Assembly (NCBI GenBank): GCA_021613535.1
Contig: CP075494.1
Span: forward strand, 8,866,001-8,930,000
DNA from: Adineta vaga
Lineage: Eukaryota > Animalia > Rotifera
Length of the DNA: 64,000 bases
Direction: 5' to 3'
How positions within the stretch are numbered: the first letter of the stretch is position 1; every line of letters begins with the position of its first letter. The notes beneath the pieces were generated by a model that ran no database searches, was not told the DNA's origin, and was given only the letters and a program-made list of their open reading frames with translations. Of this stretch, positions 36,280 to 46,003 are shown piece by piece. The translations under genes and the position numbers were made by a program.

Positions 36280-37218
36280 TCAAAATCGAACACTTGCAGT
36301 TTGCATCGATGGACGTGCAAATCTCCTTTGACTAGCTTTGAATAAATTGATTAATTCATGTCGATAAAATGGTGTACAAAGTGTATAGACATAAAAACTT
36401 AGAGCAAAAGTCATATTAAATAGAAGACTAAATATTCGAAATAGATTATAAAGAACTCTTGTATATGCTGTTGGCATGAAAACTAAAATAACATATGTCA
36501 CTGTAAATGGAACGGTACAAATAATATGTGATAAAACATAAATAAAAAGCATCTTCAATAAATGATTATCACGTTGACGTAAACGTGTTTGATTAATAGG
36601 CATAATACGTAATCGTTGTTGACGAAGAAGTATCAATGTTATAGTACATAAAATGGTCATTAAAATTGGTGGTGTTGTGCATAGAAATAGAAATAAAAAC
36701 AAAGATAATACTTTAGTATAAGTGGAATTTGAACTGATGCAATATGTAGTAGTTGAAGAAATTTGAAGTGCATACCAAACTGGTACATGAGAATAAGCAA
36801 GAAATACTATAAAAACCATTGTAGGAATTAAACAAGATGCAATTTTTATTGAAGCAATTCTTCTTAAGTGTACGTTCGCTGAACTGGTACATAAACGATC
36901 AAAACAAGCCAGAACAATAAAATACGGTGATAAAGTATATAGACTATCATTTAAATAAGTTTTTGTTCGACAAAAAAAATTCGATTGTCTAGATAATTCA
37001 ATATCAAATTGACTTGAAAGCCATCCGGGCAGAACAACAATATAAAGTACAAGAAGATCATTGAATGAAAGTGCACGAAAATATAATGAACATGAAGTAT
37101 TTCGTAAAGATCTTTGTGTAAAAAATAAAATTTGATTGAGCAATGCTCCAATAGTTCCAAGTAAAATCAATGGTGGTTGAGAATAACGAGCTATTTCAAA
37201 ATAGAGTGAATCTGTCAT
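36280..37218 (-). CDS. Intronless class A GPCR (lineage-expanded orphan family)
   Basis: 312 aa with 7 hydrophobic segments; GTIGALLN, LSFND, CFDRL, ICTVP and SFYVYTLCTPFYR. Confidence 0.9.
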   Translation of the reverse strand: MTDSLYFEIARYSQPPLILLGTIGALLNQILFFTQRSLRNTSCSLYFRALSFNDLLVLYIVVLPGWLSSQFDIELSRQSNFFCRTKTYLNDSLYTLSPYFIVLACFDRLCTSSANVHLRRIASIKIASCLIPTMVFIVFLAYSHVPVWYALQISSTTTYCISSNSTYTKVLSLFLFLFLCTTPPILMTILCTITLILLRQQRLRIMPINQTRLRQRDNHLLKMLFIYVLSHIICTVPFTVTYVILVFMPTAYTRVLYNLFRIFSLLFNMTFALSFYVYTLCTPFYRHELINLFKASQRRFARPSMQTASVRF

Positions 37219-37491
37219 ACTTTCTATTCAGTTGAATAAATGAATAGATTTGTTTTTCAAATTTATCTTGAAAACAAAAAAATATCTCATTACTTTCAAT
37301 TATCAGATTATTTTAAAGAGCATTAATATCATCGAGACATTATCATGCACATCGATATTCAGTTTATTTTAAAACATTTGATTGAATAACTGTCAATTAA
37401 AATTAACTGTCAAAATATATTTAGATTAAAAGTGATGACGACAGAAGAAATTTAACAAAGTTGAATAATCAGAAAATATTTCGTTAGTTTA

Positions 37492-38454
37492 TTAATCGCC
37501 AGGCATATTTGTTACTCTTCGTATGTGCATATGATTATCTTTATTATTCAATTGTTGAAATCGTCGATAAATTGTTTTGAATAAACTGAATAATTCAGCA
37601 CGATAAAAAGGTGTACCTAATGTATAAATATAAAAACTTGTTGCATATATTAAATGAATTAAAAAATGGAATATTTGGAATAGAAAATCCAATGTTGGTG
37701 ACAATCGATCTTGATTTCGAATAACGATTAAATATGTTGTAGCAAATGGAACTGTGCAAATAATATTCCATGTAACATAGATAAAAAGCATTTTCAACAA
37801 TTGATTATCACGATGACGTAAACGTGATTGATTAACAGGCATGATTCGATGTCGTTGTTGTCGAAGTAAAATAAACGTAATACTACAAAAAATAATCATC
37901 AATATGGGAGGAGTAAAACAAATCATACAGAGTAAAAATATAGCCAGAAAATTATTGTACGTCAGATCAGTTATCTTACAAACTTGATCGGATGGAATAA
38001 CAATAAGTTTAAACCACACTAGAACATGTAGATAAGCGAGACATATAATGATAATTATTACAGGAATAATAAACGATGCAATATGTATTGTAGAAATTTT
38101 TCTCAATCGAGCATTGGTTGAACTTGTACATAGACGATCGAAACAGACCAAAACGAGAAAATAGGGTGATAAGGAATAGAATACATATGTTAAATATGAG
38201 AATAGTTTACAATACCATTCATATTGATTTGCTGGATTAATATCAAATACCACATCTAACCATTGAGTTAATATAACACACCAAATGACAAGAAGATCAT
38301 TCGCTGCCATCACTCGAAAGTATAATGCACAGGATGTTGATCGTAATTGTTTTCGAGAATAGAATAAAAGTTGATTTAATAGAGCACCAATAGTACCTAA
38401 AATAATAATCACTGGTTGAATATAACGAATCAATTGTTCATTTATGAATTCCAT
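37492..38454 (-). CDS. Intronless class A GPCR, tandem paralog of 36280-37218
   Basis: 320 aa. Shares GTIGALLNQ, LSPYF.VL.CFDRLCTSS and LLRQQR.RIMP.NQ.RLR.RDN.LLKMLFIYV with its neighbour. Confidence 0.9.
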   Translation of the reverse strand: MEFINEQLIRYIQPVIIILGTIGALLNQLLFYSRKQLRSTSCALYFRVMAANDLLVIWCVILTQWLDVVFDINPANQYEWYCKLFSYLTYVFYSLSPYFLVLVCFDRLCTSSTNARLRKISTIHIASFIIPVIIIIICLAYLHVLVWFKLIVIPSDQVCKITDLTYNNFLAIFLLCMICFTPPILMIIFCSITFILLRQQRHRIMPVNQSRLRHRDNQLLKMLFIYVTWNIICTVPFATTYLIVIRNQDRLSPTLDFLFQIFHFLIHLIYATSFYIYTLGTPFYRAELFSLFKTIYRRFQQLNNKDNHMHIRRVTNMPGD

Positions 38455-39152
38455 TCAAATAAAATTTAGTTCGTATAGTAATACAGTTATTCTCAGAATG
38501 CTTTGAAATGACTAAATGATAAGCATTCATGTCATAGTTAGATTAATTTGATGTAGATTTATTTTGGTTTTTCAACAGAGAATTAATTAGAACTGTCAAA
38601 GTCGACGGTTAGTCGGTGTATGGTGCTGATAGACATGATGTATCATTCATATACGAAGTATTTCTAGGAATGACGACATCTTTTTAATCATACTTTTTTT
38701 ATAGAAATCTAAAAAAAAGAGATGAATAATCTATGCATCATGAAAAGAATGCAAAGTACACTTTCTCAGACAGTTCTTTTAAAAAGTATTTTGTCATAGA
38801 AATGATAAATACAATAGCTGATACATTTTCGAGTGCTTTTTAATAATTATACAGAATAAGATCTAATTCATGGATGAATGTACTTATCAATCTACGAAGA
38901 ATGTTTCTATAATCAAACACATAGTTTTAATTCAGAGACTTTTATACGCTTCGCTTTTGATAAAGTCTCCATTCTTATCTATGATTTCATTGAAGTAATG
39001 TACAATGAGAATGTAAATAGTCTATTTGTCAATACTTTTTATTCGAAACAACTTCTAGAAAAATCAATAGTTTAATCAAACGATAAAAAAAACAAATTTG
39101 TACATAAATAAACAAAAATCACAAACAGGCTCAATAAACATCAAATCAATTA

Positions 39153-39691
39153 TCATAGAATGGATAGATTTGTTTTATCCTTCTTGGCACGTACAATTTT
39201 AATGGATGCTTGCCGTTGAAAAGCACAAATCATCATATGTTCCATATATAAATCTTTATTACGTAAACATCGACGACATAGTTGACATTTAAATAAGATC
39301 TAAATCAATCATATACAAAACTATTATTGAATTTAAATCTATTCAACAAACCAAATACCAATGAATGCATTGATCGATTATTCGTAGTCGAAGATTTTGT
39401 AATTATCGGAGAAATTCGAGGTGAAAGTGATAAACGTTCATCATCGTCATCAATATCATTATTGTTTGTTAAACTCAAAGTAAACTTTCGTTTATTTGAT
39501 GATTCATTATGATCAGTTCGTTTACGTTTATTATCGATTGATTTAATTGCCGCGAAACTTTATATTTTGAGAAAGGAAAACTTTATTACAAGAATAGGAA
39601 TTCTCATTTATTTTTACCGTGGTTGGGCCTTCAGTGGTAATTGTTGTTCTTCCAACCATTTAGTTGCCATTCTAGTGAATAAATGACCCAT
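39153..39691 (-). CDS. Small (~140 aa) protein with a basic NLS-like segment and a C-terminal C2HC zinc finger, 3 exons (not in the ORF track)
   Basis: Spliced: MGHLFTRMATKWLEEQQLPLKAQPR|FAAIKSIDNKRKRTDHNESSNKRKF...DIDDDDER...|ILFKCQLCRRCLRNKDLYMEHMMICAF...SIL*. Canonical introns keep the frame. The start could instead be the second ATG (39668-39670). Confidence 0.7.
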
Positions 39692-40483
39692 GAATATATG
39701 TTTTAAAAAAATGATATGATTAAAAGAATGAACACGATATACTGTTCAAAAATTAACGGTCGATCTATTTAAAGAACAAGAAAGAAAGAAAGAAAGAGAC
39801 TGGATATTGAAATAGTCAAATGAATAAAGAATGCATTCATTTTGACTAACTTTCCAAACACAATTTTATTTCGAATAGTTTTTATTAGTATAGTATAACA
39901 AAACATTTTAGTTCATAATAAGAATTATCATTCACTGAACAATAAACTTTATTTTAAAATCATAAAAAGTAACTGAAACAAATAGATTGTATATTTAATA
40001 TTAGAATAAGATTCAATTAAATGAATATTTATACACCATTTCTTTTTTTTTTGTAATTGTAGTTTAAAATAATTATAGTATTACAAAGTTCATTTCGTGA
40101 TTCGATCGATGTAAAGCAATGGAAGATCTGCTGAATGTCTGCAAAATTGACGGAATGTTAAAAACATAACATCGAAAGAAAAATATCTATTTGCTCGATT
40201 TTTCTATTATCGTAAGGGCATGACGTGTACACAGTTAGTCAGTATTTCAATATCAATTGAATTGACTGCGTGACATATGTTGCTATTCTTATTTCAGAAA
40301 AATAAATATACCCACGAGATGCTTGTTCGCCTTTGGATTAAGATATGTCCGTCATTTTAACCTTTCTATACCTTTTAATTATTGTATGTTGTTAATTCTT
40401 ATAATACATTTATTTTTGATTAAATGCCTTTGAATATCTATGTTTTATGATAAAAGAGAAAGATTCGTAGTCAAAACTTATAT

Positions 40484-41440
40484 TTAATTCGAAGTCCAGG
40501 TCAACCGTTGTATGGTTGTTCGAATAATTTGAACGAATCTTACTCGAAATATATCTCCTGTAAGTACATATAAACAAAATGGTATACAAGCAGGCGTATA
40601 ACTAAGAAGAAGAGCAATATTGAAAAGAAGGTTTTCAATTGCGATTTGTATCGATGATTTGTAATTATAAAATGTATATGTTGTATAAAATTTTTGTATT
40701 GCTTGAGGAAGATTAAAGATTGTTAGTAGAATAATTTGTAGGAATAACATTTTTGTTAGACCTCTATCGGCTTTTCTACGTCTTGATAAGACAGGAATAA
40801 TCGATAATGGTACTATTCGACGAGCTTGACGTATATTTTTAATAGTACATAGACCGAATATCATCATGATAGCTGATGAAATGATTGTTGTAAAAAATGC
40901 TTGTGATAAATCATTAAATATACGACAAAAGTCTGATTTTGCATAGCATTTCAATGGCGTACCAACAAGATTTGCATCAAAACAATATAATGTTTCAGCC
41001 CAAAATATAACAGATACAAGAAAAACTAGAATAATCAAACGAATTGCTTGTTTTCTATTACTCTTTCGTCGTGTATTGGCATCAGGTGATGAGACCAAAT
41101 ACCGATCGATTGCAGCACAAACCAGCAACCATGAAGAAATGTTACGTGCTGTTAATAAGATAAATAGTCGACTTGTACAGAGTAATGGTTGTGTTTCAGT
41201 TTGATCGGCAAGTATATTCCAACTGTTTAACATACGTGGAGGAATTCCTGATATAAGAATGATAATATTTGAAATACTTGCTATTAAAAAATACAGAACA
41301 CATGGTTGTGTACGAAGTGCTCGTTGATTGAATACGAGACAACATGATAGATTACTAATGATTCCAAATAGAAGCAATATAATAGAGAGATAACGATTTA
41401 TTTGTAATGTTGCATATCGAATTTGATCGATATTCACCAT
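40484..41440 (-). CDS. Intronless class A GPCR (lineage-expanded orphan family)
   Basis: 318 aa, 7TM; GIISN, PCVLYF, AAIDRY, KMLFLQ and PFCLYVLTGDIFR. Confidence 0.9.
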   Translation of the reverse strand: MVNIDQIRYATLQINRYLSIILLLFGIISNLSCCLVFNQRALRTQPCVLYFLIASISNIIILISGIPPRMLNSWNILADQTETQPLLCTSRLFILLTARNISSWLLVCAAIDRYLVSSPDANTRRKSNRKQAIRLIILVFLVSVIFWAETLYCFDANLVGTPLKCYAKSDFCRIFNDLSQAFFTTIISSAIMMIFGLCTIKNIRQARRIVPLSIIPVLSRRRKADRGLTKMLFLQIILLTIFNLPQAIQKFYTTYTFYNYKSSIQIAIENLLFNIALLLSYTPACIPFCLYVLTGDIFRVRFVQIIRTTIQRLTWTSN

Positions 41441-42306
41441 CGTTTTATATGTTAAATACTATTTTTTTCTCTAGAATGACCAACTAGAGATTTTCTAATA
41501 AGAACATAAACCTTTGTATGAGATGTTAATATGACAAGAACGGTAACTTTTCTGAAAAAGAATTAAAAAAAGAAAGAGGCTTTATTCACTTCTGTATTTT
41601 TCGGATTTTTTTCTCAAAAATATTTAAAACATTTTACTAGATTAATAGATCATCCATTGTTTATTACCAGATATGAAAAAAAAAGAATGTTCTTATCGTA
41701 ATTTTGAAGTCAATATAAGAAGTCAGCGAAAAATTATTTCATAATTAATGTTTAATAAATGTATGATCTCAAAATATCATACATACTGTTCTGTCGACTC
41801 TAATTCTTCAGAGATGAATAGAGGACTATTCAGTAATCCTATCGAGTCATACTCTTTAATTTAAAAATGGATACAATATCATACTTTCAGATGCGAACAG
41901 CATCATATTAATAAAAGTAAACCTTTGTTTTCTTGCATAAAGATCTGTAGATGACTTCATATAACTGTATTAATATTATAGTTCTGTTTATTAAGTATTC
42001 AAATCTTTCGTGATAATAAATGAGGATGTATCGATAGAAAAAAAAAGAGTGAGACAATCTCAAATCTAATGAAAAGGTTATAACTGATATTTTCAGTTGA
42101 TCATTGAATTTATCGTTATAAGACAAAATATGAAAGAAAAAAATATATTATGAAAACAAACTGTTCTCGAGCGACCTCTGTTCACATTTATCTTTATTGA
42201 TTCTCACTGGTGACTTTGCCATTCAAATAGCTATCCATACCTTTTTTTTTATTTGTTTGAAATTACTGAATTTGTGATCGTATTGTTGAAATTTTGTTAG
42301 TGAACT

Positions 42307-43367
42307 ATGGCTAATTCCACATCATCTGCAGTAGTTCTTCATCATTCAAATTCTGCTCACGGTCATCAGGCACCACCGGATGTTGTGGTTGATGCGTTAC
42401 CGTATTATGATAGTGGATATGAGGAACCTGGTGTACGTGAAGCTGTAAGTTATTTATACTTCTTTTTCGTATTGTTTCTTGCGAACGATGGATATATTTT
42501 ATTTTAGGCTCTTAGTTTAGTTGAAGATGAAACACGTCGTTATAAACCAACAAAAAATTACTTAGAACAACTCGGCCAACCTCTATATCATTCATTTGAG
42601 GTAATTTCAGTTGAAAAATGTCATTACAAATTTCATCTCTGATATTCTTATTTAATAGACAGAAATTATGAAAACAGAATTCGAACGTCTTTCCAATCAA
42701 TTACCAATGGAAATGTTGAGCATGAAACGGTAATACAATCAACATATTTTCTAATAATACTCATTTTCTTCTTCTTCTTCTAGTTATGAATTACCAACTC
42801 CACCATCTGGTAAACAAACAGATTTTCAAGCCTGGAATGAATGTGTAGAAAATTCCTATGCTCAACTTGAACATCAACAAACACGGTAATTGAACATATA
42901 TAGAAATGTATCATTCAAAGAAACAATCTTATTTATTTAGTATTATGAATCTTGAATTAATGTGGGATTACGGAGCAAATACATGGAAGATTTATAATAC
43001 TACATTACAAACTATGTTAGAACAAGCTCAAAAACAATTATTAGAATTTCGGTAAGTTATCTTTAAAAGATTTTTTTAGTTTTCTCATATTCATTTGTTT
43101 TGATATTAGAAAACATATCCAAGAAATCAATTTCAATCGTAAAGATGAACAAACACGAGCAGGAAGTAAATTAAGTACACTTGAACAAACGTAAGTTGTT
43201 TGAATAATGTTTTTACGTGATGATAGTCTTGTGTTTTTGTATTTAGCTGGGTTGGTTTAGTTGGAAAGAATTATGAAATTGAATGTGCTATTGTTGAATT
43301 AGAAAAAGAAGTTGGAAATTTACGAAAACAACAAAAATCAAATGGAGTTACATCAACTGAACATTAA
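42307..43367 (+). CDS. BCAS2: Pre-mRNA splicing factor SPF27/BCAS2, 7 exons
   Basis: [63 protein letters not shown] and [12 protein letters not shown] after splicing. Stop 43365-43367. Confidence 0.95.
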
Positions 43368-43517
43368 TGATGATCAAGGAGAAAGAATCGAATCTGTTTT
43401 TGTAAATTTTCTGTTTTTTTTGTTAACACTTCTGAATTAAAAAGAAAGAGAGAGAGAATTTGATTGGAAACATCCATCGAGTATCCATAGGCAATTTGTA
43501 TTGTAGATACATATGCA

Positions 43518-44045
43518 ATGATACGGTTTGGTTGGATAAATAGTCTTCTCGGTGGTTTTCTCATATCTATATCTTGTCCATGTTGTTTCCTGCAAGTGCT
43601 TCTTAATCTATTCGGTATCGGTTGCGCTGGATTGAATACTATTCTTGTTCCTTATCGACCGATATTCATTTCATTAACTGTAATTTCCTTAACTTATTCA
43701 TATATTCGTTATCGTCCATCGAAACTTCATTTTATGATCGTGTTGATATTCACATTAGGTTTGTCATTTTCACCAGAGATTCTTCAAATGTATAAAAATC
43801 CATCGGTAACTAATATTCTATTGGATGACAATGTTATTATTACACATTGGCAAATTGTCGGCATGCATTGTGAATCATGTCGATCAACTGCTGTTCGAGT
43901 ATTACAAAAAATCGATGGAATTCTAGATGCTAATGTTGATCTCGATACTGGTCAAGCTGATGTAATCTCACGTGTCCATATCGAAGATGATATAATCATT
44001 CAAGGTATACAATCAGTTGGATTTCAAATTTATAAAATTGTTTGA
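43518..44045 (+). CDS. MerT-like three-TM heavy-metal transporter fused to a C-terminal HMA (MerP/CopZ-like) domain, intronless
   Basis: TM1 has a vicinal CC (SCPCC), then LVPYRPIFI (MerT has ASACC...LEPYRPIFI), a third TM, and an HMA domain GMHCESC...LQKIDGILDANVDLDTGQADV...IQSVGF. Confidence 0.85.
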   Translation: MIRFGWINSLLGGFLISISCPCCFLQVLLNLFGIGCAGLNTILVPYRPIFISLTVISLTYSYIRYRPSKLHFMIVLIFTLGLSFSPEILQMYKNPSVTNILLDDNVIITHWQIVGMHCESCRSTAVRVLQKIDGILDANVDLDTGQADVISRVHIEDDIIIQGIQSVGFQIYKIV

Positions 44046-44446: not shown

Positions 44447-46003
44447 TTAACATGAGGATGATGCAAGTTGCCATTTTCTATATGGTCTTACTAAATGATC
44501 TGAGGATATCTGTTCCATTGGATTTGTACAAACGTGCATTTTATTCGAAGAGGAATGTACTTCTTTTGTTTTCTTTCGTAAATATACAAGATAAAGTAAT
44601 GGTGATGTAAGAAATATTAGAACTACAGCTGCTAATACAAATATTGCAAAAATAACAGGTGATAAAACACCTAATTCAACGCCAACATTAAGTACAACTA
44701 ATTGAACAATACCACGAGTATTCATTAAAATACCAACAGCAATAGCATACGACCATGTTTGTGTTTTTCGTGTGACTAATCTTGTCATTAATGTAACAGG
44801 CACTATCTTAGCAATTGAAATAATAAAAAATAAACTAACAAATGTATACCATGTCTGAATAGTATTCAACATATAGAGATGAGTTTTTAAACCCGAATTA
44901 GTAAAATAAAGTGGAAGGAAAAATTCAATACACAATAATTCAATTCGAACAGCTAAAAAATCATGTAAACTTGATCCTTTCATCTTTCGAGGAATAATTA
45001 AACCTGCGATAAAAGCACCAAAAAATGCATGAATATGAATTACTTCACTTGCGAATGATGCTACAAGCAATATCAAAACACAAGTGATGACCAAATAAAT
45101 ATTATGTTCATCATTTCGATGAAAATAATAACGATGTAGAAGAGAAAGTAATGGACGGACGATAATAAACATAACCAAGAGAAACGCAATTGTTAATAAA
45201 AGAGTATAGAGACCTTCAATTGATGGACCACCTTTACTCAAAGCAGTAGCAACAGCTAATATCATCCATACGACAATATCTTCAATTGCAGCAATACTAA
45301 TTGTTAGAACACCTTGATAAATAATACAAGTCATACAATCGAAGAAAATAAAAGAAATAGTTTTCAAACTAATACGAACCAAGTGGTGTATTGATAATAT
45401 TTGTAGCTTGTAAAATCGAAGCTAAAACCGGAAATGCTGAAAAACCAATACCTGAACCTAAATGACGAAGTGACAAATAATGAAAGCATATATAGTAGAT
45501 ATTCTTCTACCAATAAATAGAATAAACGAAGATTTATCAACACCTGGTGTTGCCATTTGATAGAGCCATAAACCAGTTATACATCCGATACCAACTGGAA
45601 TGATAATACTCGCTGAAGCAATTGGTAACGTTTGCCGCCATCCTTGTCGAATTTCATTAGGATCCATTTTAAGTCCAAGATAAAACATGAAAAATATTAA
45701 GCCTAATGACGCTACTAATTGAAGTGAGTCTAATGTATGTGATGCAAATAGAAATGAACTAAAACCAGGTATAAAACCTAATGCACTAGGTCCTAAAATA
45801 ATACCAGCTAGAATTTGTCCAATAACAGCAGGTTGATGAATAAATGATAGAACTTTCCCTAATATTTTACATAGAATTAATGTGAAAGACACTTGAAGAA
45901 GAAAAACAGCAAGAAGATCTTCACGTGGATCTTCAAAGATAGTTCTTCGATGTGGTACTGTTGATAAAAAACGTTGCTGGAGCACAGCATCGAAAAAGTA
46001 CAT
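44447..46003 (-). CDS. CPA2 cation/H+ antiporter of KHA1/CHX type, 3 exons
   Basis: QPAVIGQILAGIILGPSALG, GLIFFMFYLGL, SAFPVLASIL (middle exon), HAFFGAFIAGLIIP, FFLPLYFTNSGLKT and GILMNTRGIVQLVVLNVG. Confidence 0.92.

What the first reader, a model, noticed from the sequence alone, without database searches (positions are those of the whole stretch)
43518..44045. Animal-encoded MerT-MerP-like fusion: candidate horizontally acquired mercury/heavy-metal transporter
Seen: an intronless 175-aa ORF with three TM helices, a vicinal Cys pair in TM1, the heptapeptide PYRPIFI and a C-terminal GMxCxxC HMA domain. Known: CC in TM1 plus EPYRPIFI characterises the bacterial mer-operon transporter MerT, MerP is an HMA protein, and MerT-type proteins are not standard metazoan genes. 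Inference: a foreign single-chain uptake or sequestration module. It lacks the MerT cytoplasmic-loop Cys pair and no merA is in the window, so it may serve Cu/Cd/Zn handling or compartmental sequestration rather than Hg reduction. The donor could be a microbial eukaryote rather than a bacterium.
Basis: partly seen in the sequence, partly recalled or inferred. Interest (0 to 1): 0.8.

Follow-up and report, generated by a model that had tools for sequence, protein, structure and literature searches.

The report
Rotifer MerT-type metal transporter, foreign origin
A bdelloid rotifer (Adineta vaga) carries an intact gene for a small membrane protein built like the bacterial mercury importer MerT fused to a metal-binding domain, and its closest relatives are in algae and other protists rather than in bacteria or other animals, so it was most likely picked up long ago from a microbial eukaryote.

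Summary
Window 43518-44045(+) is an intronless 175-aa ORF. It has three predicted membrane helices, a vicinal Cys pair in helix 1, PYRPIFI, and a C-terminal HMA domain (GMHCESC).

The genome is a bdelloid rotifer, and one hit is named Adineta vaga. The gene is a resident, not contamination:
- Its composition matches the host.
- A 54%-identical copy lies in a collinear duplicated block on another chromosome.
- The same neighbours flank it in two independent assemblies.
- Over 50 Adineta/Rotaria-like homologues keep all five key cysteines.

The family is homologous end to end to bacterial MerT-HMA fusions (hhalign 99.85%, E 1e-30). It misses the curated cut-offs of Pfam MerT (24.8 vs 32.9 bits) and NCBIfam MerTP (43 vs 180 bits).

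Its true kin are a protist-wide eukaryotic family, named in Chromera, Amoebophrya, Cymbomonas, Pycnococcus, Phaeocystis, Flectonema and Choanoeca. This family has an extra invariant loop Cys (GCAG), usually lacks the cytoplasmic Cys pair, and is often a tandem double module. Rotifers form one clade inside it (99/95), and it is separated from bacteria at 100/99. No other animal appeared.

The best reading is an ancient eukaryote-to-bdelloid transfer of a thiol-relay metal importer. Substrate and expression are untested. No MerA is present. The scan had not noted this on other DNA.

The parts
43518..44045 (+). Complete intronless ORF (175 aa plus stop): a MerT-like three-helix membrane module fused to a C-terminal HMA domain
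43527..43610 (+). Membrane helix 1 (residues 4-31), kinked at the Cys-rich motif S-C-P-C-C
   Evidence: AF2 secondary structure; aligns with MerT helix 1
43581..43586 (+). Vicinal Cys pair C22-C23. It is invariant in 66 family members and is the counterpart of the MerT helix-1 CC pair.
43620..43631 (+). G-C-A-G motif with invariant C36, in the outer loop or short helix between TM1 and TM2. This is the signature of the eukaryotic family. Bacterial MerT-HMA proteins have no Cys here (G-x-S-G-A-G and variants).
43650..43670 (+). PYRPIFI at the start of TM2. P45 and R47 are (nearly) invariant. It aligns with E-x-Y-R-P of bacterial MerT-HMA.
43656..43712 (+). Membrane helix 2 (residues 47-65)
43707..43727 (+). 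Short TM2-TM3 loop RYRPSKL. It carries three positive charges and no Cys, and is inferred to be cytoplasmic. The MerT cytoplasmic Cys pair and its insertion are absent.
43722..43793 (+). Membrane helix 3 (residues 69-83) followed by a short helix 85-92 that carries the conserved S-P-E-x-L
43836..44039 (+). HMA (ferredoxin-like) domain, residues 107-174. It is inferred to face outside or into a lumen.
   Evidence: Pfam HMA 6.9e-11; pLDDT 94-96; PDB matches to the HMA domains of HMA7, ATP7B, MerP and CopZ
43860..43880 (+). Metal-binding loop G-M-H-C-E-S-C (C118 and C121 invariant)
43242..43367 (+). The same C-terminal peptide lies upstream of the orthologue in an independent assembly.
   Evidence: L095
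44447..46003 (-). Convergent downstream host gene of the Na+/H+ exchanger family (PF00999), in at least two exons. The same gene lies downstream of the orthologue in another independent assembly.
   Evidence: L096

Best explanation
**What it is.** The gene is a functional, long-resident bdelloid-rotifer gene. It belongs to a family of single-chain MerT-like/HMA proteins that is widespread in microbial eukaryotes and is homologous end to end to bacterial MerT-HMA ('MerTP') fusions.

**How it got there.** Bdelloids most likely acquired it by horizontal transfer from a protist or alga. The transfer predates both the bdelloid genome duplication and the Adineta-Rotaria split. Two diverged copies are kept.

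**Topology (inferred).**
- The N-terminus is in the cytosol.
- There are three membrane helices.
- The positively charged TM2-TM3 loop is in the cytosol.
- The HMA domain is on the outer or lumenal face, as for periplasmic MerP.

**Mechanism (inferred).** This is by analogy with MerP/MerT thiol relay, whose mechanism I recall from established knowledge.
1. The outer CxxC of the HMA domain captures a thiophilic metal ion: Hg(II), Cu(I), Cd(II) or Zn(II).
2. The ion is passed to the family-specific loop Cys (C36) and the helix-1 Cys pair.
3. It is released to cytosolic thiols.

There is no cytoplasmic Cys pair and no MerA to receive the metal, so the end point is uptake or hand-off to glutathione or metallothionein, not reduction to Hg(0).

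**Shown:** architecture, homology, family membership, genomic residence, conservation.
**Inferred:** topology, direction of transport, substrate.
For: **Architecture**
-.
- The whole-chain shape match is best to bacterial MerT+HMA clusters (TM-score by query 0.65 over 159 residues and 0.71 over 165 residues).

**Homology**
- hhalign of 66 family members against 6 bacterial MerT-HMA proteins: probability 99.85%, E 1.1e-30, 170 collinear columns.
- 11 of 22 family members hit Pfam MerT at E<0.01.

**The family is eukaryotic**
- A profile search of 1.84 billion representatives puts proteins with the shared motif SSCC-LQL-LN...GCAG...P-R-P...PE-L...GM-C-E-x-C ahead of bacterial MerTP.
- Named members: Choanoeca perplexa, Chromera velia, Flectonema neradi, Phaeocystis cordata, MAST-3 and MMETSP transcripts; Cymbomonas tetramitiformis, Amoebophrya A25 and A120, Pycnococcus provasolii.
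- Long contigs carrying family members have eukaryote-type neighbours such as zf-CCCH and UBA.
- A scan of 185,579 prokaryotic species with the rotifer membrane motif found only HMA-domain matches.

**Tree** (IQ-TREE, LG+C20+F+G4, 93 rows)
- Bacteria versus the family: 100/99.
- Rotifers monophyletic: 99/95.

**Residence in the genome**
- The window is C5:8866001-8930000 of a 6-contig, 100.8-Mb genome.
- The paralogue P0049 is named Adineta vaga, on a contig of the same length as C2.
- The C5 and C2 copies lie in collinear blocks.
- The order upstream gene -> this ORF <- Na/H exchanger recurs in independent Logan contigs.
- ORF GC3 is 21% against 16-19% in neighbouring genes.

**No reductase partner**
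- The best MerA-model hit in the genome is 77 bits against a 600-bit cut-off.

**Background**
- The mer system: PMC3466566.
- High HGT load of bdelloids: abstracts of PMC4632278 and PMC3499245.
Against: - Curated family thresholds are not met: Pfam MerT 24.8 vs 32.9 bits, NCBIfam MerTP 43 vs 180 bits.
- The position of rotifers inside the eukaryotic family is unresolved. They branch at its base with weak support (84/27). Their weakly attached nearest neighbours in the first tree, P0116 and P0177, come from unnamed 54-61% GC metagenome contigs. No donor lineage can therefore be named.
- Rotifer sequences have a deviant amino-acid composition, which may distort their placement.
- Absence from other animals rests on the named hits in truncated lists (the best 120 or 150 shown), not on a search of animal genomes.
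- Transport, its direction and the metal are untested. Importing Hg(II) without a reductase would be harmful, which argues that Hg is not the native substrate.
Confidence: 0.7

Rival explanations
1. Direct transfer from a bacterium: the gene is a bacterial mer-operon MerT-MerP (MerTP) fusion that entered the rotifer genome directly.
For: - The best curated model is bacterial MerTP.
- The shape search's top clusters are bacterial, from Bacteroidota and Planctomycetota.
- The language-model neighbours ranked 2-4 are bacterial.
- Many foreign genes in bdelloids are bacterial (abstracts listed).
Against: - Rotifer proteins share the family-specific features of the eukaryotic family, not of the 11 bacterial proteins examined: the GCAG loop Cys, L-Q-L-x-L-N, and loss of the loop insertion.
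- The tree separates the 11 bacterial sequences from rotifers plus protists at 100/99.
- No prokaryotic genome matched the membrane motif.
- The nearest Atlas cluster (score 0.94) is mostly eukaryotic.
Confidence: 0.1
2. Vertical inheritance: the gene descends from the common ancestor of animals and choanoflagellates and was lost in nearly all other animals.
For: - A choanoflagellate (Choanoeca perplexa) has a family member.
- The family is broad in eukaryotes.
- Rotifers branch deep in the family.
Against: - It needs many independent losses across animals. No other animal appears among the named hits.
- The choanoflagellate protein is a double-module form. Its two halves nest in the two module clades shared with algae and alveolates, away from rotifers.
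- The AU test rejects rotifers plus Choanoeca module 2 (p 1.2e-6).
- The AU test only marginally rejects rotifers plus module 1 (p 0.042, a long branch).
Confidence: 0.07
3. Same protein, different job: it is not an importer. It could be a membrane-anchored metal chaperone or sensor, or a transporter in an endomembrane (gut lysosome or vacuole) that retrieves or sequesters Cu, Zn or Cd.
For: - There is no MerA and no cytoplasmic Cys pair.
- The family is common in marine algae and phagotrophs, where trace-metal supply matters.
- The HMA loop GMHC-E-x-C resembles HMA loops of Cu/Zn ATPases as much as that of MerP.
- The window's paralogue clade has gained a 3-residue insertion that makes a C-P-C-C or C-C-P-C-C run in helix 1, and it sits on a long branch.
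Against: - Nothing here bears on localisation or substrate.
- The conserved collinear architecture with bacterial MerT-HMA fusions favours the same basic outside-to-inside relay.
Confidence: 0.3
4. Contamination or assembly artefact: the ORF belongs to a microbe sequenced along with the rotifer.
For: - The ORF is intronless and short, and its family is otherwise microbial.
Against: - It lies 8.9 Mb into a 16.9-Mb chromosome-scale contig.
- It is 150 bp from an intron-containing host gene.
- Its GC (33.5%) and GC3 (21%) are host-like.
- A second copy lies in a collinear block on another chromosome.
- The same flanks occur in two independent assemblies of other bdelloid-like genomes.
- Homologues are named in five Adineta and Rotaria species.
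Confidence: 0.01

Closest known systems
Bacterial MerT-HMA fusions (NCBIfam NF033556 'MerTP'; Planctomycetota and Bacteroidota MerT+HMA clusters)
   Same: - The order of parts is the same: helix 1 with a vicinal CC, a Y-R-P motif at helix 2, helix 3, a linker, then an HMA domain with CxxC (often C-E-x-C).
- Profile-profile probability is 99.85% over 170 columns.
- The whole-chain shape matches, with TM-score 0.65-0.71.
   Different: - The score is far below the curated cut-off (43 vs 180 bits).
- The rotifer and protist proteins lack the Cys-bearing cytoplasmic loop insertion.
- They have an invariant Cys in the outer loop (GCAG) and L-Q-L-x-L-N in helix 1.
- There is no mer operon and no MerA.
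- The two groups form separate clades at 100/99.
Classical MerT (Pfam PF02411) working with separate periplasmic MerP and cytoplasmic MerA
   Same: - Three-helix membrane module with CC in helix 1 and P-Y-R-P-I-F at helix 2.
- A partner HMA protein on the outer face.
- The thiol-relay logic (PMC3466566 for the system).
   Different: - Below the Pfam gathering score (24.8 vs 32.9 bits). Only helices 1-2 align to the profile.
- The HMA domain is fused.
- The cytoplasmic Cys pair is absent.
- There is no reductase partner.
Eukaryotic MerT-like/HMA family (e.g. Chromera velia Cvel_21079 / A0A0G4GBC2; Cymbomonas CYMTET_30314; Pycnococcus provasolii 'mercuric ion transport protein'; Amoebophrya; Choanoeca perplexa EP00045_P001261)
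   Same: - All signature positions are shared: C22, C23, G35, C36, G38, R47, C118 and C121 are invariant in 66 sequences.
- Identity is 22-34%.
- Rotifers fall inside this family in the tree.
   Different: - Most named protist and algal members are tandem double modules of 425-630 aa. The rotifer proteins are single modules of 172-177 aa.
- The rotifer loop reads GMHC rather than GMGC, a feature shared with the unnamed metagenome proteins P0116 and P0177.
- A few members (P0119, P0141) still have a loop Cys pair.
- The family has only automatic names. I found no paper describing it.
HMA-domain metallochaperones and the N-terminal domains of P1B ATPases (CopZ, Atx1/ATOX1, ATP7A/B, MerP)
   Same: The C-terminal domain has the same fold and the same GMxCxxC loop.
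   Different: Those are soluble proteins or belong to ATP-driven pumps. Here the domain is tethered to a three-helix MerT-like module.

Membership tests
Pfam MerT (PF02411) | Score at or above the curated gathering threshold (32.9 bits) | tested here: not met
   24.8 bits, E 2.3e-5, profile positions 11-73 of 116. The C2 paralogue scores 31.3 bits in the six-frame search.
Pfam MerT (PF02411) | Vicinal Cys pair in the first membrane helix | tested here: met
   C22-C23 are invariant in 66 sequences and align with the bacterial CC.
Pfam MerT (PF02411) | Second Cys pair in the cytoplasmic loop between helices 2 and 3 | tested here: not met
   The loop is RYRPSKL. The bacterial Cys-bearing insertion is absent.
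Pfam MerT (PF02411) | Three membrane helices | tested here: met
   The AF2 model gives helices 4-31, 47-65 and 69-83. This is a prediction only.
Pfam MerT (PF02411) | Works with MerA in a mer operon | tested here: not met
   No mer genes flank it. The best MerA-model hit in the genome is 77 bits against a 600-bit cut-off.
Pfam MerT (PF02411) | Hg(II) transport activity | not testable with these tools
   Needs uptake or sensitivity assays.
NCBIfam MerTP fusion (NF033556) | Score at or above the curated cut-off (180 bits) | tested here: not met
   43.1 bits. Other members of the eukaryotic family score 25-84 bits.
NCBIfam MerTP fusion (NF033556) | MerT-type membrane module followed by a C-terminal HMA domain in one chain | tested here: met
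Pfam HMA (PF00403) | Score above the gathering threshold, the ferredoxin-like fold and the GMxCxxC loop | tested here: met
   42.8 bits against a 24.8-bit cut-off. pLDDT is 94-96 with a beta-alpha-beta-beta-alpha-beta fold. PDB matches have probability 1.00.
Eukaryotic MerT-like/HMA family (unnamed; GCAG type) | Signature residues: CC in helix 1, L-Q-L-x-L-N, G-C-A-G loop Cys, P-x-R-P, P-E-x-L after helix 3, and CxxC in the HMA domain | tested here: met
   All are present in the window protein.
Eukaryotic MerT-like/HMA family (unnamed; GCAG type) | Groups with family members to the exclusion of bacterial MerT-HMA proteins | tested here: met
   The split has 100/99 support. The bacterial sample is small: 9 Planctomycetota sequences plus 2 unnamed ones.
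Horizontally acquired bdelloid gene | No orthologue in other animals; nearest relatives are non-metazoan | tested here: inconclusive
   Only Adineta and Rotaria appear among the named animal hits. All other named relatives are protists or algae. The lists are truncated, and animal genomes were not searched directly.
Horizontally acquired bdelloid gene | Physically integrated in the host genome | tested here: met
   - Chromosome-scale contig.
- Host-gene flanks conserved in independent assemblies.
- A paralogue in a collinear duplicated block.
- Host-like composition.

The most novel reading that the evidence does not exclude
The rotifer gene is the only animal representative of an undescribed, eukaryote-wide class of MerT-type thiol-relay transporters.

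- **Distinguishing features:** a third invariant Cys in the outer loop, no cytoplasmic Cys pair, and frequent tandem duplication.
- **Proposed native job:** acquisition of an essential thiophilic metal (Cu(I), Zn or Cd) rather than mercury detoxification.
- **How bdelloids got it:** eukaryote-to-animal transfer, after which the gene was duplicated. One copy evolved a CPCC-type helix-1 site.
Probability: 0.3. Interest if true: 0.7.

Novelty: new variant of a known kind. Interest (0 to 1): 0.5.

Why it matters
MerT-type transporters are treated as bacterial mercury-resistance parts. One paper in the library states that merT is not known in fungi (PMC5061714). I found no paper on eukaryotic members.

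This work shows three things:
- A coherent family of such proteins runs through green algae, alveolates, haptophytes, stramenopiles, diplonemids and a choanoflagellate.
- One animal group, the bdelloid rotifers, holds two conserved copies.
- These proteins occur without any mercuric reductase in the rotifer genome.

That gives a directly testable candidate for a new route of thiophilic-metal uptake in eukaryotes. It also adds a clear eukaryote-derived case to the catalogue of foreign genes in bdelloids.

On its own, the rotifer gene is one more of many foreign genes in a genome known for them, so the surprise is moderate.

Tried and rejected
1. **Expression.** I only translated its last exon to compare it with another contig.

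2. **Transcript-like contigs.** Four short Logan contigs with rotifer homologues all proved to be genomic, with neighbouring genes. They helped with synteny but not with expression.

3. **Donor identity.** The two nearest non-rotifer proteins, P0116 and P0177, sit on short 54-61% GC metagenome contigs with no recognisable neighbours. No organism could be named.

4. **Prokaryotic scan.**
   - The scan with the diverse alignment failed because it had no conserved stretch.
   - With the rotifer alignment it returned only HMA domains of P-type ATPases and chaperones.
   - It is an exact-pattern scan, so it cannot prove that GCAG-type proteins are absent from bacteria.

5. **Cluster look-ups** of unnamed rotifer-like hits gave no accession or organism.

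6. **Literature.** I found no paper linking MerT to rotifers or describing eukaryotic MerT-like proteins.

7. **Rejected readings.** Contamination, a direct bacterial donor and vertical descent are treated under the rival explanations.

8. **AU tests.** Several script calls gave no answer. The tests completed on re-running.

Full report
**1. The observation**

Window 43518-44045(+) is a single open frame of 175 codons from ATG to TGA.
- Helix 1 carries S-C-P-C-C, with the vicinal pair C22-C23.
- P-Y-R-P-I-F-I is residues 45-51.
- G-M-H-C-E-S-C is residues 115-121.

Pfam finds an HMA domain above threshold (42.8 bits). It finds MerT below threshold (24.8 vs 32.9 bits, helices 1-2 only). The best NCBIfam model is the bacterial MerT-MerP fusion 'MerTP' at 43 bits, against a cut-off of 180.

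An AlphaFold2 model built on a 66-sequence alignment has mean pLDDT 81 (58-89 in the membrane part, 94-96 in the HMA domain). It shows:
- helices 4-31, 47-65 and 69-83;
- a short helix 36-43 in the first loop;
- a helix 85-92;
- a classical HMA fold at 107-174.

**2. Whose genome, and is the gene really in it**

The genome has 6 contigs and 100.8 Mb. The window is C5:8866001-8930000. Homologues are named Adineta vaga, A. ricciae, Rotaria sordida, R. socialis and two further Rotaria species. The A. vaga entry sits on a contig of 16,274,841 bp, which is the length of C2 here. So this is a bdelloid rotifer, A. vaga or a very close relative.

Four lines show the gene is resident.
- **Position.** It lies 150 bp downstream of an intron-containing host gene and converges on a Na+/H+-exchanger-family gene.
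- **Composition.** ORF GC is 33.5% and GC3 is 21%. Neighbouring genes have GC3 of 16-19%.
- **Second copy.** A 54%-identical, equally intronless copy lies at C2:9973744-9974256. Genes on both sides of the two copies are collinear over about 17 kb. The copies therefore look like products of the bdelloid genome duplication. That bdelloids are degenerate tetraploids is my background knowledge.
- **Independent assemblies.** In Logan contigs from two other runs, the orthologue has the same upstream gene end (L095) and the same downstream exchanger gene (L096).

The two immediate neighbours are missing from the C2 block.

**3. Conservation**

Sixteen rotifer sequences from both paralogue clades share 59% mean column identity. 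C22, C23, C36, C118 and C121 are invariant.

The window's clade (175-177 aa) differs from the other clade (172-173 aa) by a 3-residue insertion in helix 1. The insertion adds cysteines: C-C-P-C-C in most species and S-C-P-C-C here. This clade sits on a long, fully supported branch.

**4. What family it belongs to**

I searched 1.84 billion representative proteins with a profile of the rotifer sequences.

After the rotifer entries, many top-scoring hits are multi-HMA proteins. The best full-length matches are not bacterial MerTP. They are proteins that share a distinctive pattern:
- S-S-C-C-x-L-Q-L-x-L-N in helix 1;
- G-C-A-G-F-N-T-x-L-G-P-x-R-P in the loop and at the start of helix 2;
- P-E-x-L after helix 3;
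- G-M-G-C-E-A-C in the HMA domain.

Many are tandem double modules of 425-630 aa.

Named members:
- Choanoeca perplexa, Chromera velia, Flectonema neradi, Phaeocystis cordata, a MAST-3 stramenopile and MMETSP transcripts;
- Cymbomonas tetramitiformis, Amoebophrya A25 and A120, and Pycnococcus provasolii, whose entry is auto-named 'mercuric ion transport protein'.

Long contigs that carry family members have eukaryote-type neighbours.

Across 66 sequences, C22, C23, G35, C36, G38, R47, C118 and C121 are invariant.

No animal other than bdelloids appears among the named hits. The lists are truncated, and animal genomes were not searched directly.

**5. Relation to bacterial MerT**

I fetched nine Planctomycetota MerT-HMA genes. 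Two more bacterial-type proteins came from the big search. All have:
- the helix-1 CC;
- E-x-Y-R-P;
- a cytoplasmic loop insertion with one or two Cys pairs;
- no Cys at the GCAG position.

Profile-profile comparison of the eukaryotic family with these proteins gives probability 99.85% and E 1.1e-30 over 170 collinear columns. The only large difference is the missing loop insertion.

The whole-chain model is closest in shape to bacterial MerT+HMA clusters. Two family members, P0119 and P0141, still carry a loop Cys pair, which links the two groups.

So the family is a true homologue of MerT-HMA fusions. It is nevertheless a separate clade that fails the curated thresholds.

**6. Phylogeny**

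I built an IQ-TREE tree (LG+C20+F+G4 by PMSF, 93 rows, 192 columns).
- Bacteria are separated from the eukaryotic family at 100/99 (ultrafast bootstrap / SH-aLRT).
- Rotifers are monophyletic at 99/95.
- Rotifers attach at the base of the family with weak support (84/27).

In a FastTree of 218 modules, the nearest neighbours are two unnamed metagenome proteins that share G-M-H-C-E-A-C-R. The attachment is weak.

In the quick tree drawn, the two halves of the choanoflagellate protein fall in the two module clades shared with algae and alveolates.

Forcing rotifers together with its second half is rejected (AU p 1.2e-6). Forcing them with its long-branched first half is only marginally rejected (p 0.042).

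Rotifer rows have a deviant amino-acid composition, so their deep placement should be read with care.

**7. Origin**

The data fit one acquisition by the bdelloid stem lineage from a microbial eukaryote. The acquisition came before the genome duplication and before Adineta and Rotaria diverged. It was followed by full compositional adaptation.

A direct bacterial donor is disfavoured by the shared derived features and by the tree. Vertical descent from the animal-choanoflagellate ancestor would need losses throughout the animals and is not favoured by the AU tests. The donor lineage cannot be named.

**8. How it probably works (inferred)**

Charges point to the orientation of MerT with MerP outside.
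- The TM2-TM3 loop has three positive charges, which places it in the cytosol.
- The first loop has no charged residue.
- The segment after helix 3 is net negative, which places it outside.

This gives N-terminus in and HMA domain out.

By analogy with the mer system (PMC3466566 for the parts; the thiol-relay details are from my own knowledge):
1. The outer CxxC binds a thiophilic ion.
2. The ion passes to the membrane Cys pair. The family-specific loop Cys C36 is a likely extra ligand or relay step.
3. The ion is released to cytosolic thiols.

The genome has no MerA: the best hit is 77 bits against a 600-bit cut-off. It has only these two MerT-like loci. Hg(0) production is therefore not the end point.

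The family is common in marine algae and phagotrophs. Importing mercury without a reductase is harmful. For both reasons, uptake or retrieval of Cu(I), Zn or Cd is at least as likely as mercury handling. None of this was tested.

**9. What is known**

MerT-HMA fusions are catalogued in bacteria (NCBIfam). Bdelloids are known for a high load of foreign genes (abstracts of PMC4632278 and PMC3499245). I found no paper on eukaryotic MerT-like proteins or on this rotifer gene. One paper states that merT is not known in fungi (PMC5061714). The proteins exist in databases only under automatic names.

**10. Limits**
- The bacterial outgroup is small and mostly from one phylum.
- Taxon names are available for only a minority of family members.

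**Verdict**

The finding is a new variant of a known kind. Interest is moderate (0.5). It would be higher if the family proves to be a general eukaryotic metal-uptake system.

Noticed in passing
window 43575-43586, compared across alignment A1: The paralogue clade that holds the window gene has a 3-residue insertion in helix 1 that creates C-C-P-C-C (S-C-P-C-C in this genome). The other clade has S-S-C-C. The insertion clade sits on a long branch with 100/100 support, which may mean a changed metal site after duplication.
   Followed up: partly
window 36283-41458 (-), and G000:C2:9965300-9968726: There is a run of intronless rhodopsin-family 7TM receptor genes: 36283-37227, 37492-38454 and 40484-41440. 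The last two match PF00001. Diverged counterparts (21-30% identity) lie in the collinear block on C2.
   Followed up: partly
window 42307-43367 (+) and 44447-46003 (-), against C2:9970692-9976699: The two genes that flank the MerT-like gene on C5 are the upstream intron-containing gene and the Na+/H+ exchanger gene. Neither has a counterpart in the collinear C2 block, although the MerT-like gene itself is kept in both. This looks like differential loss after duplication.
   Followed up: partly
window 43495-43517: A pyrimidine-rich stretch ending in AG (43505-43506) lies 11 nt before the ATG, and the upstream gene's stop is only 150 bp away. This could be a spliced-leader acceptor, so that the two genes share a primary transcript. 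It was not tested.
   Followed up: no
P0119 and P0141 (unnamed metagenome or transcriptome proteins): These two single-module members of the eukaryotic family still carry a Cys pair in the TM2-TM3 loop (C-x6-C and C-x-C). They are intermediate between bacterial MerT-HMA proteins and the rotifer and protist forms that lost the pair.
   Followed up: partly
P0059, P0064, P0070, P0072, P0073, P0077, P0087, P0133, P0150, P0339 and others: In protists and green algae the family is mostly a tandem duplication of the whole MerT-like+HMA module. The first and second modules form two separate clades, which implies one old duplication. The second module has a 6-residue insertion before the GCAG motif.
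   Followed up: partly
G000:C3:9137321-9139280 and G000:C6:4120896-4127713: Several HMA-domain matches cluster at two loci on C3 and C6. They probably belong to multi-HMA copper-ATPase-type genes on a pair of duplicated chromosomes. Some stretches have stops inside, which may be introns.
   Followed up: no
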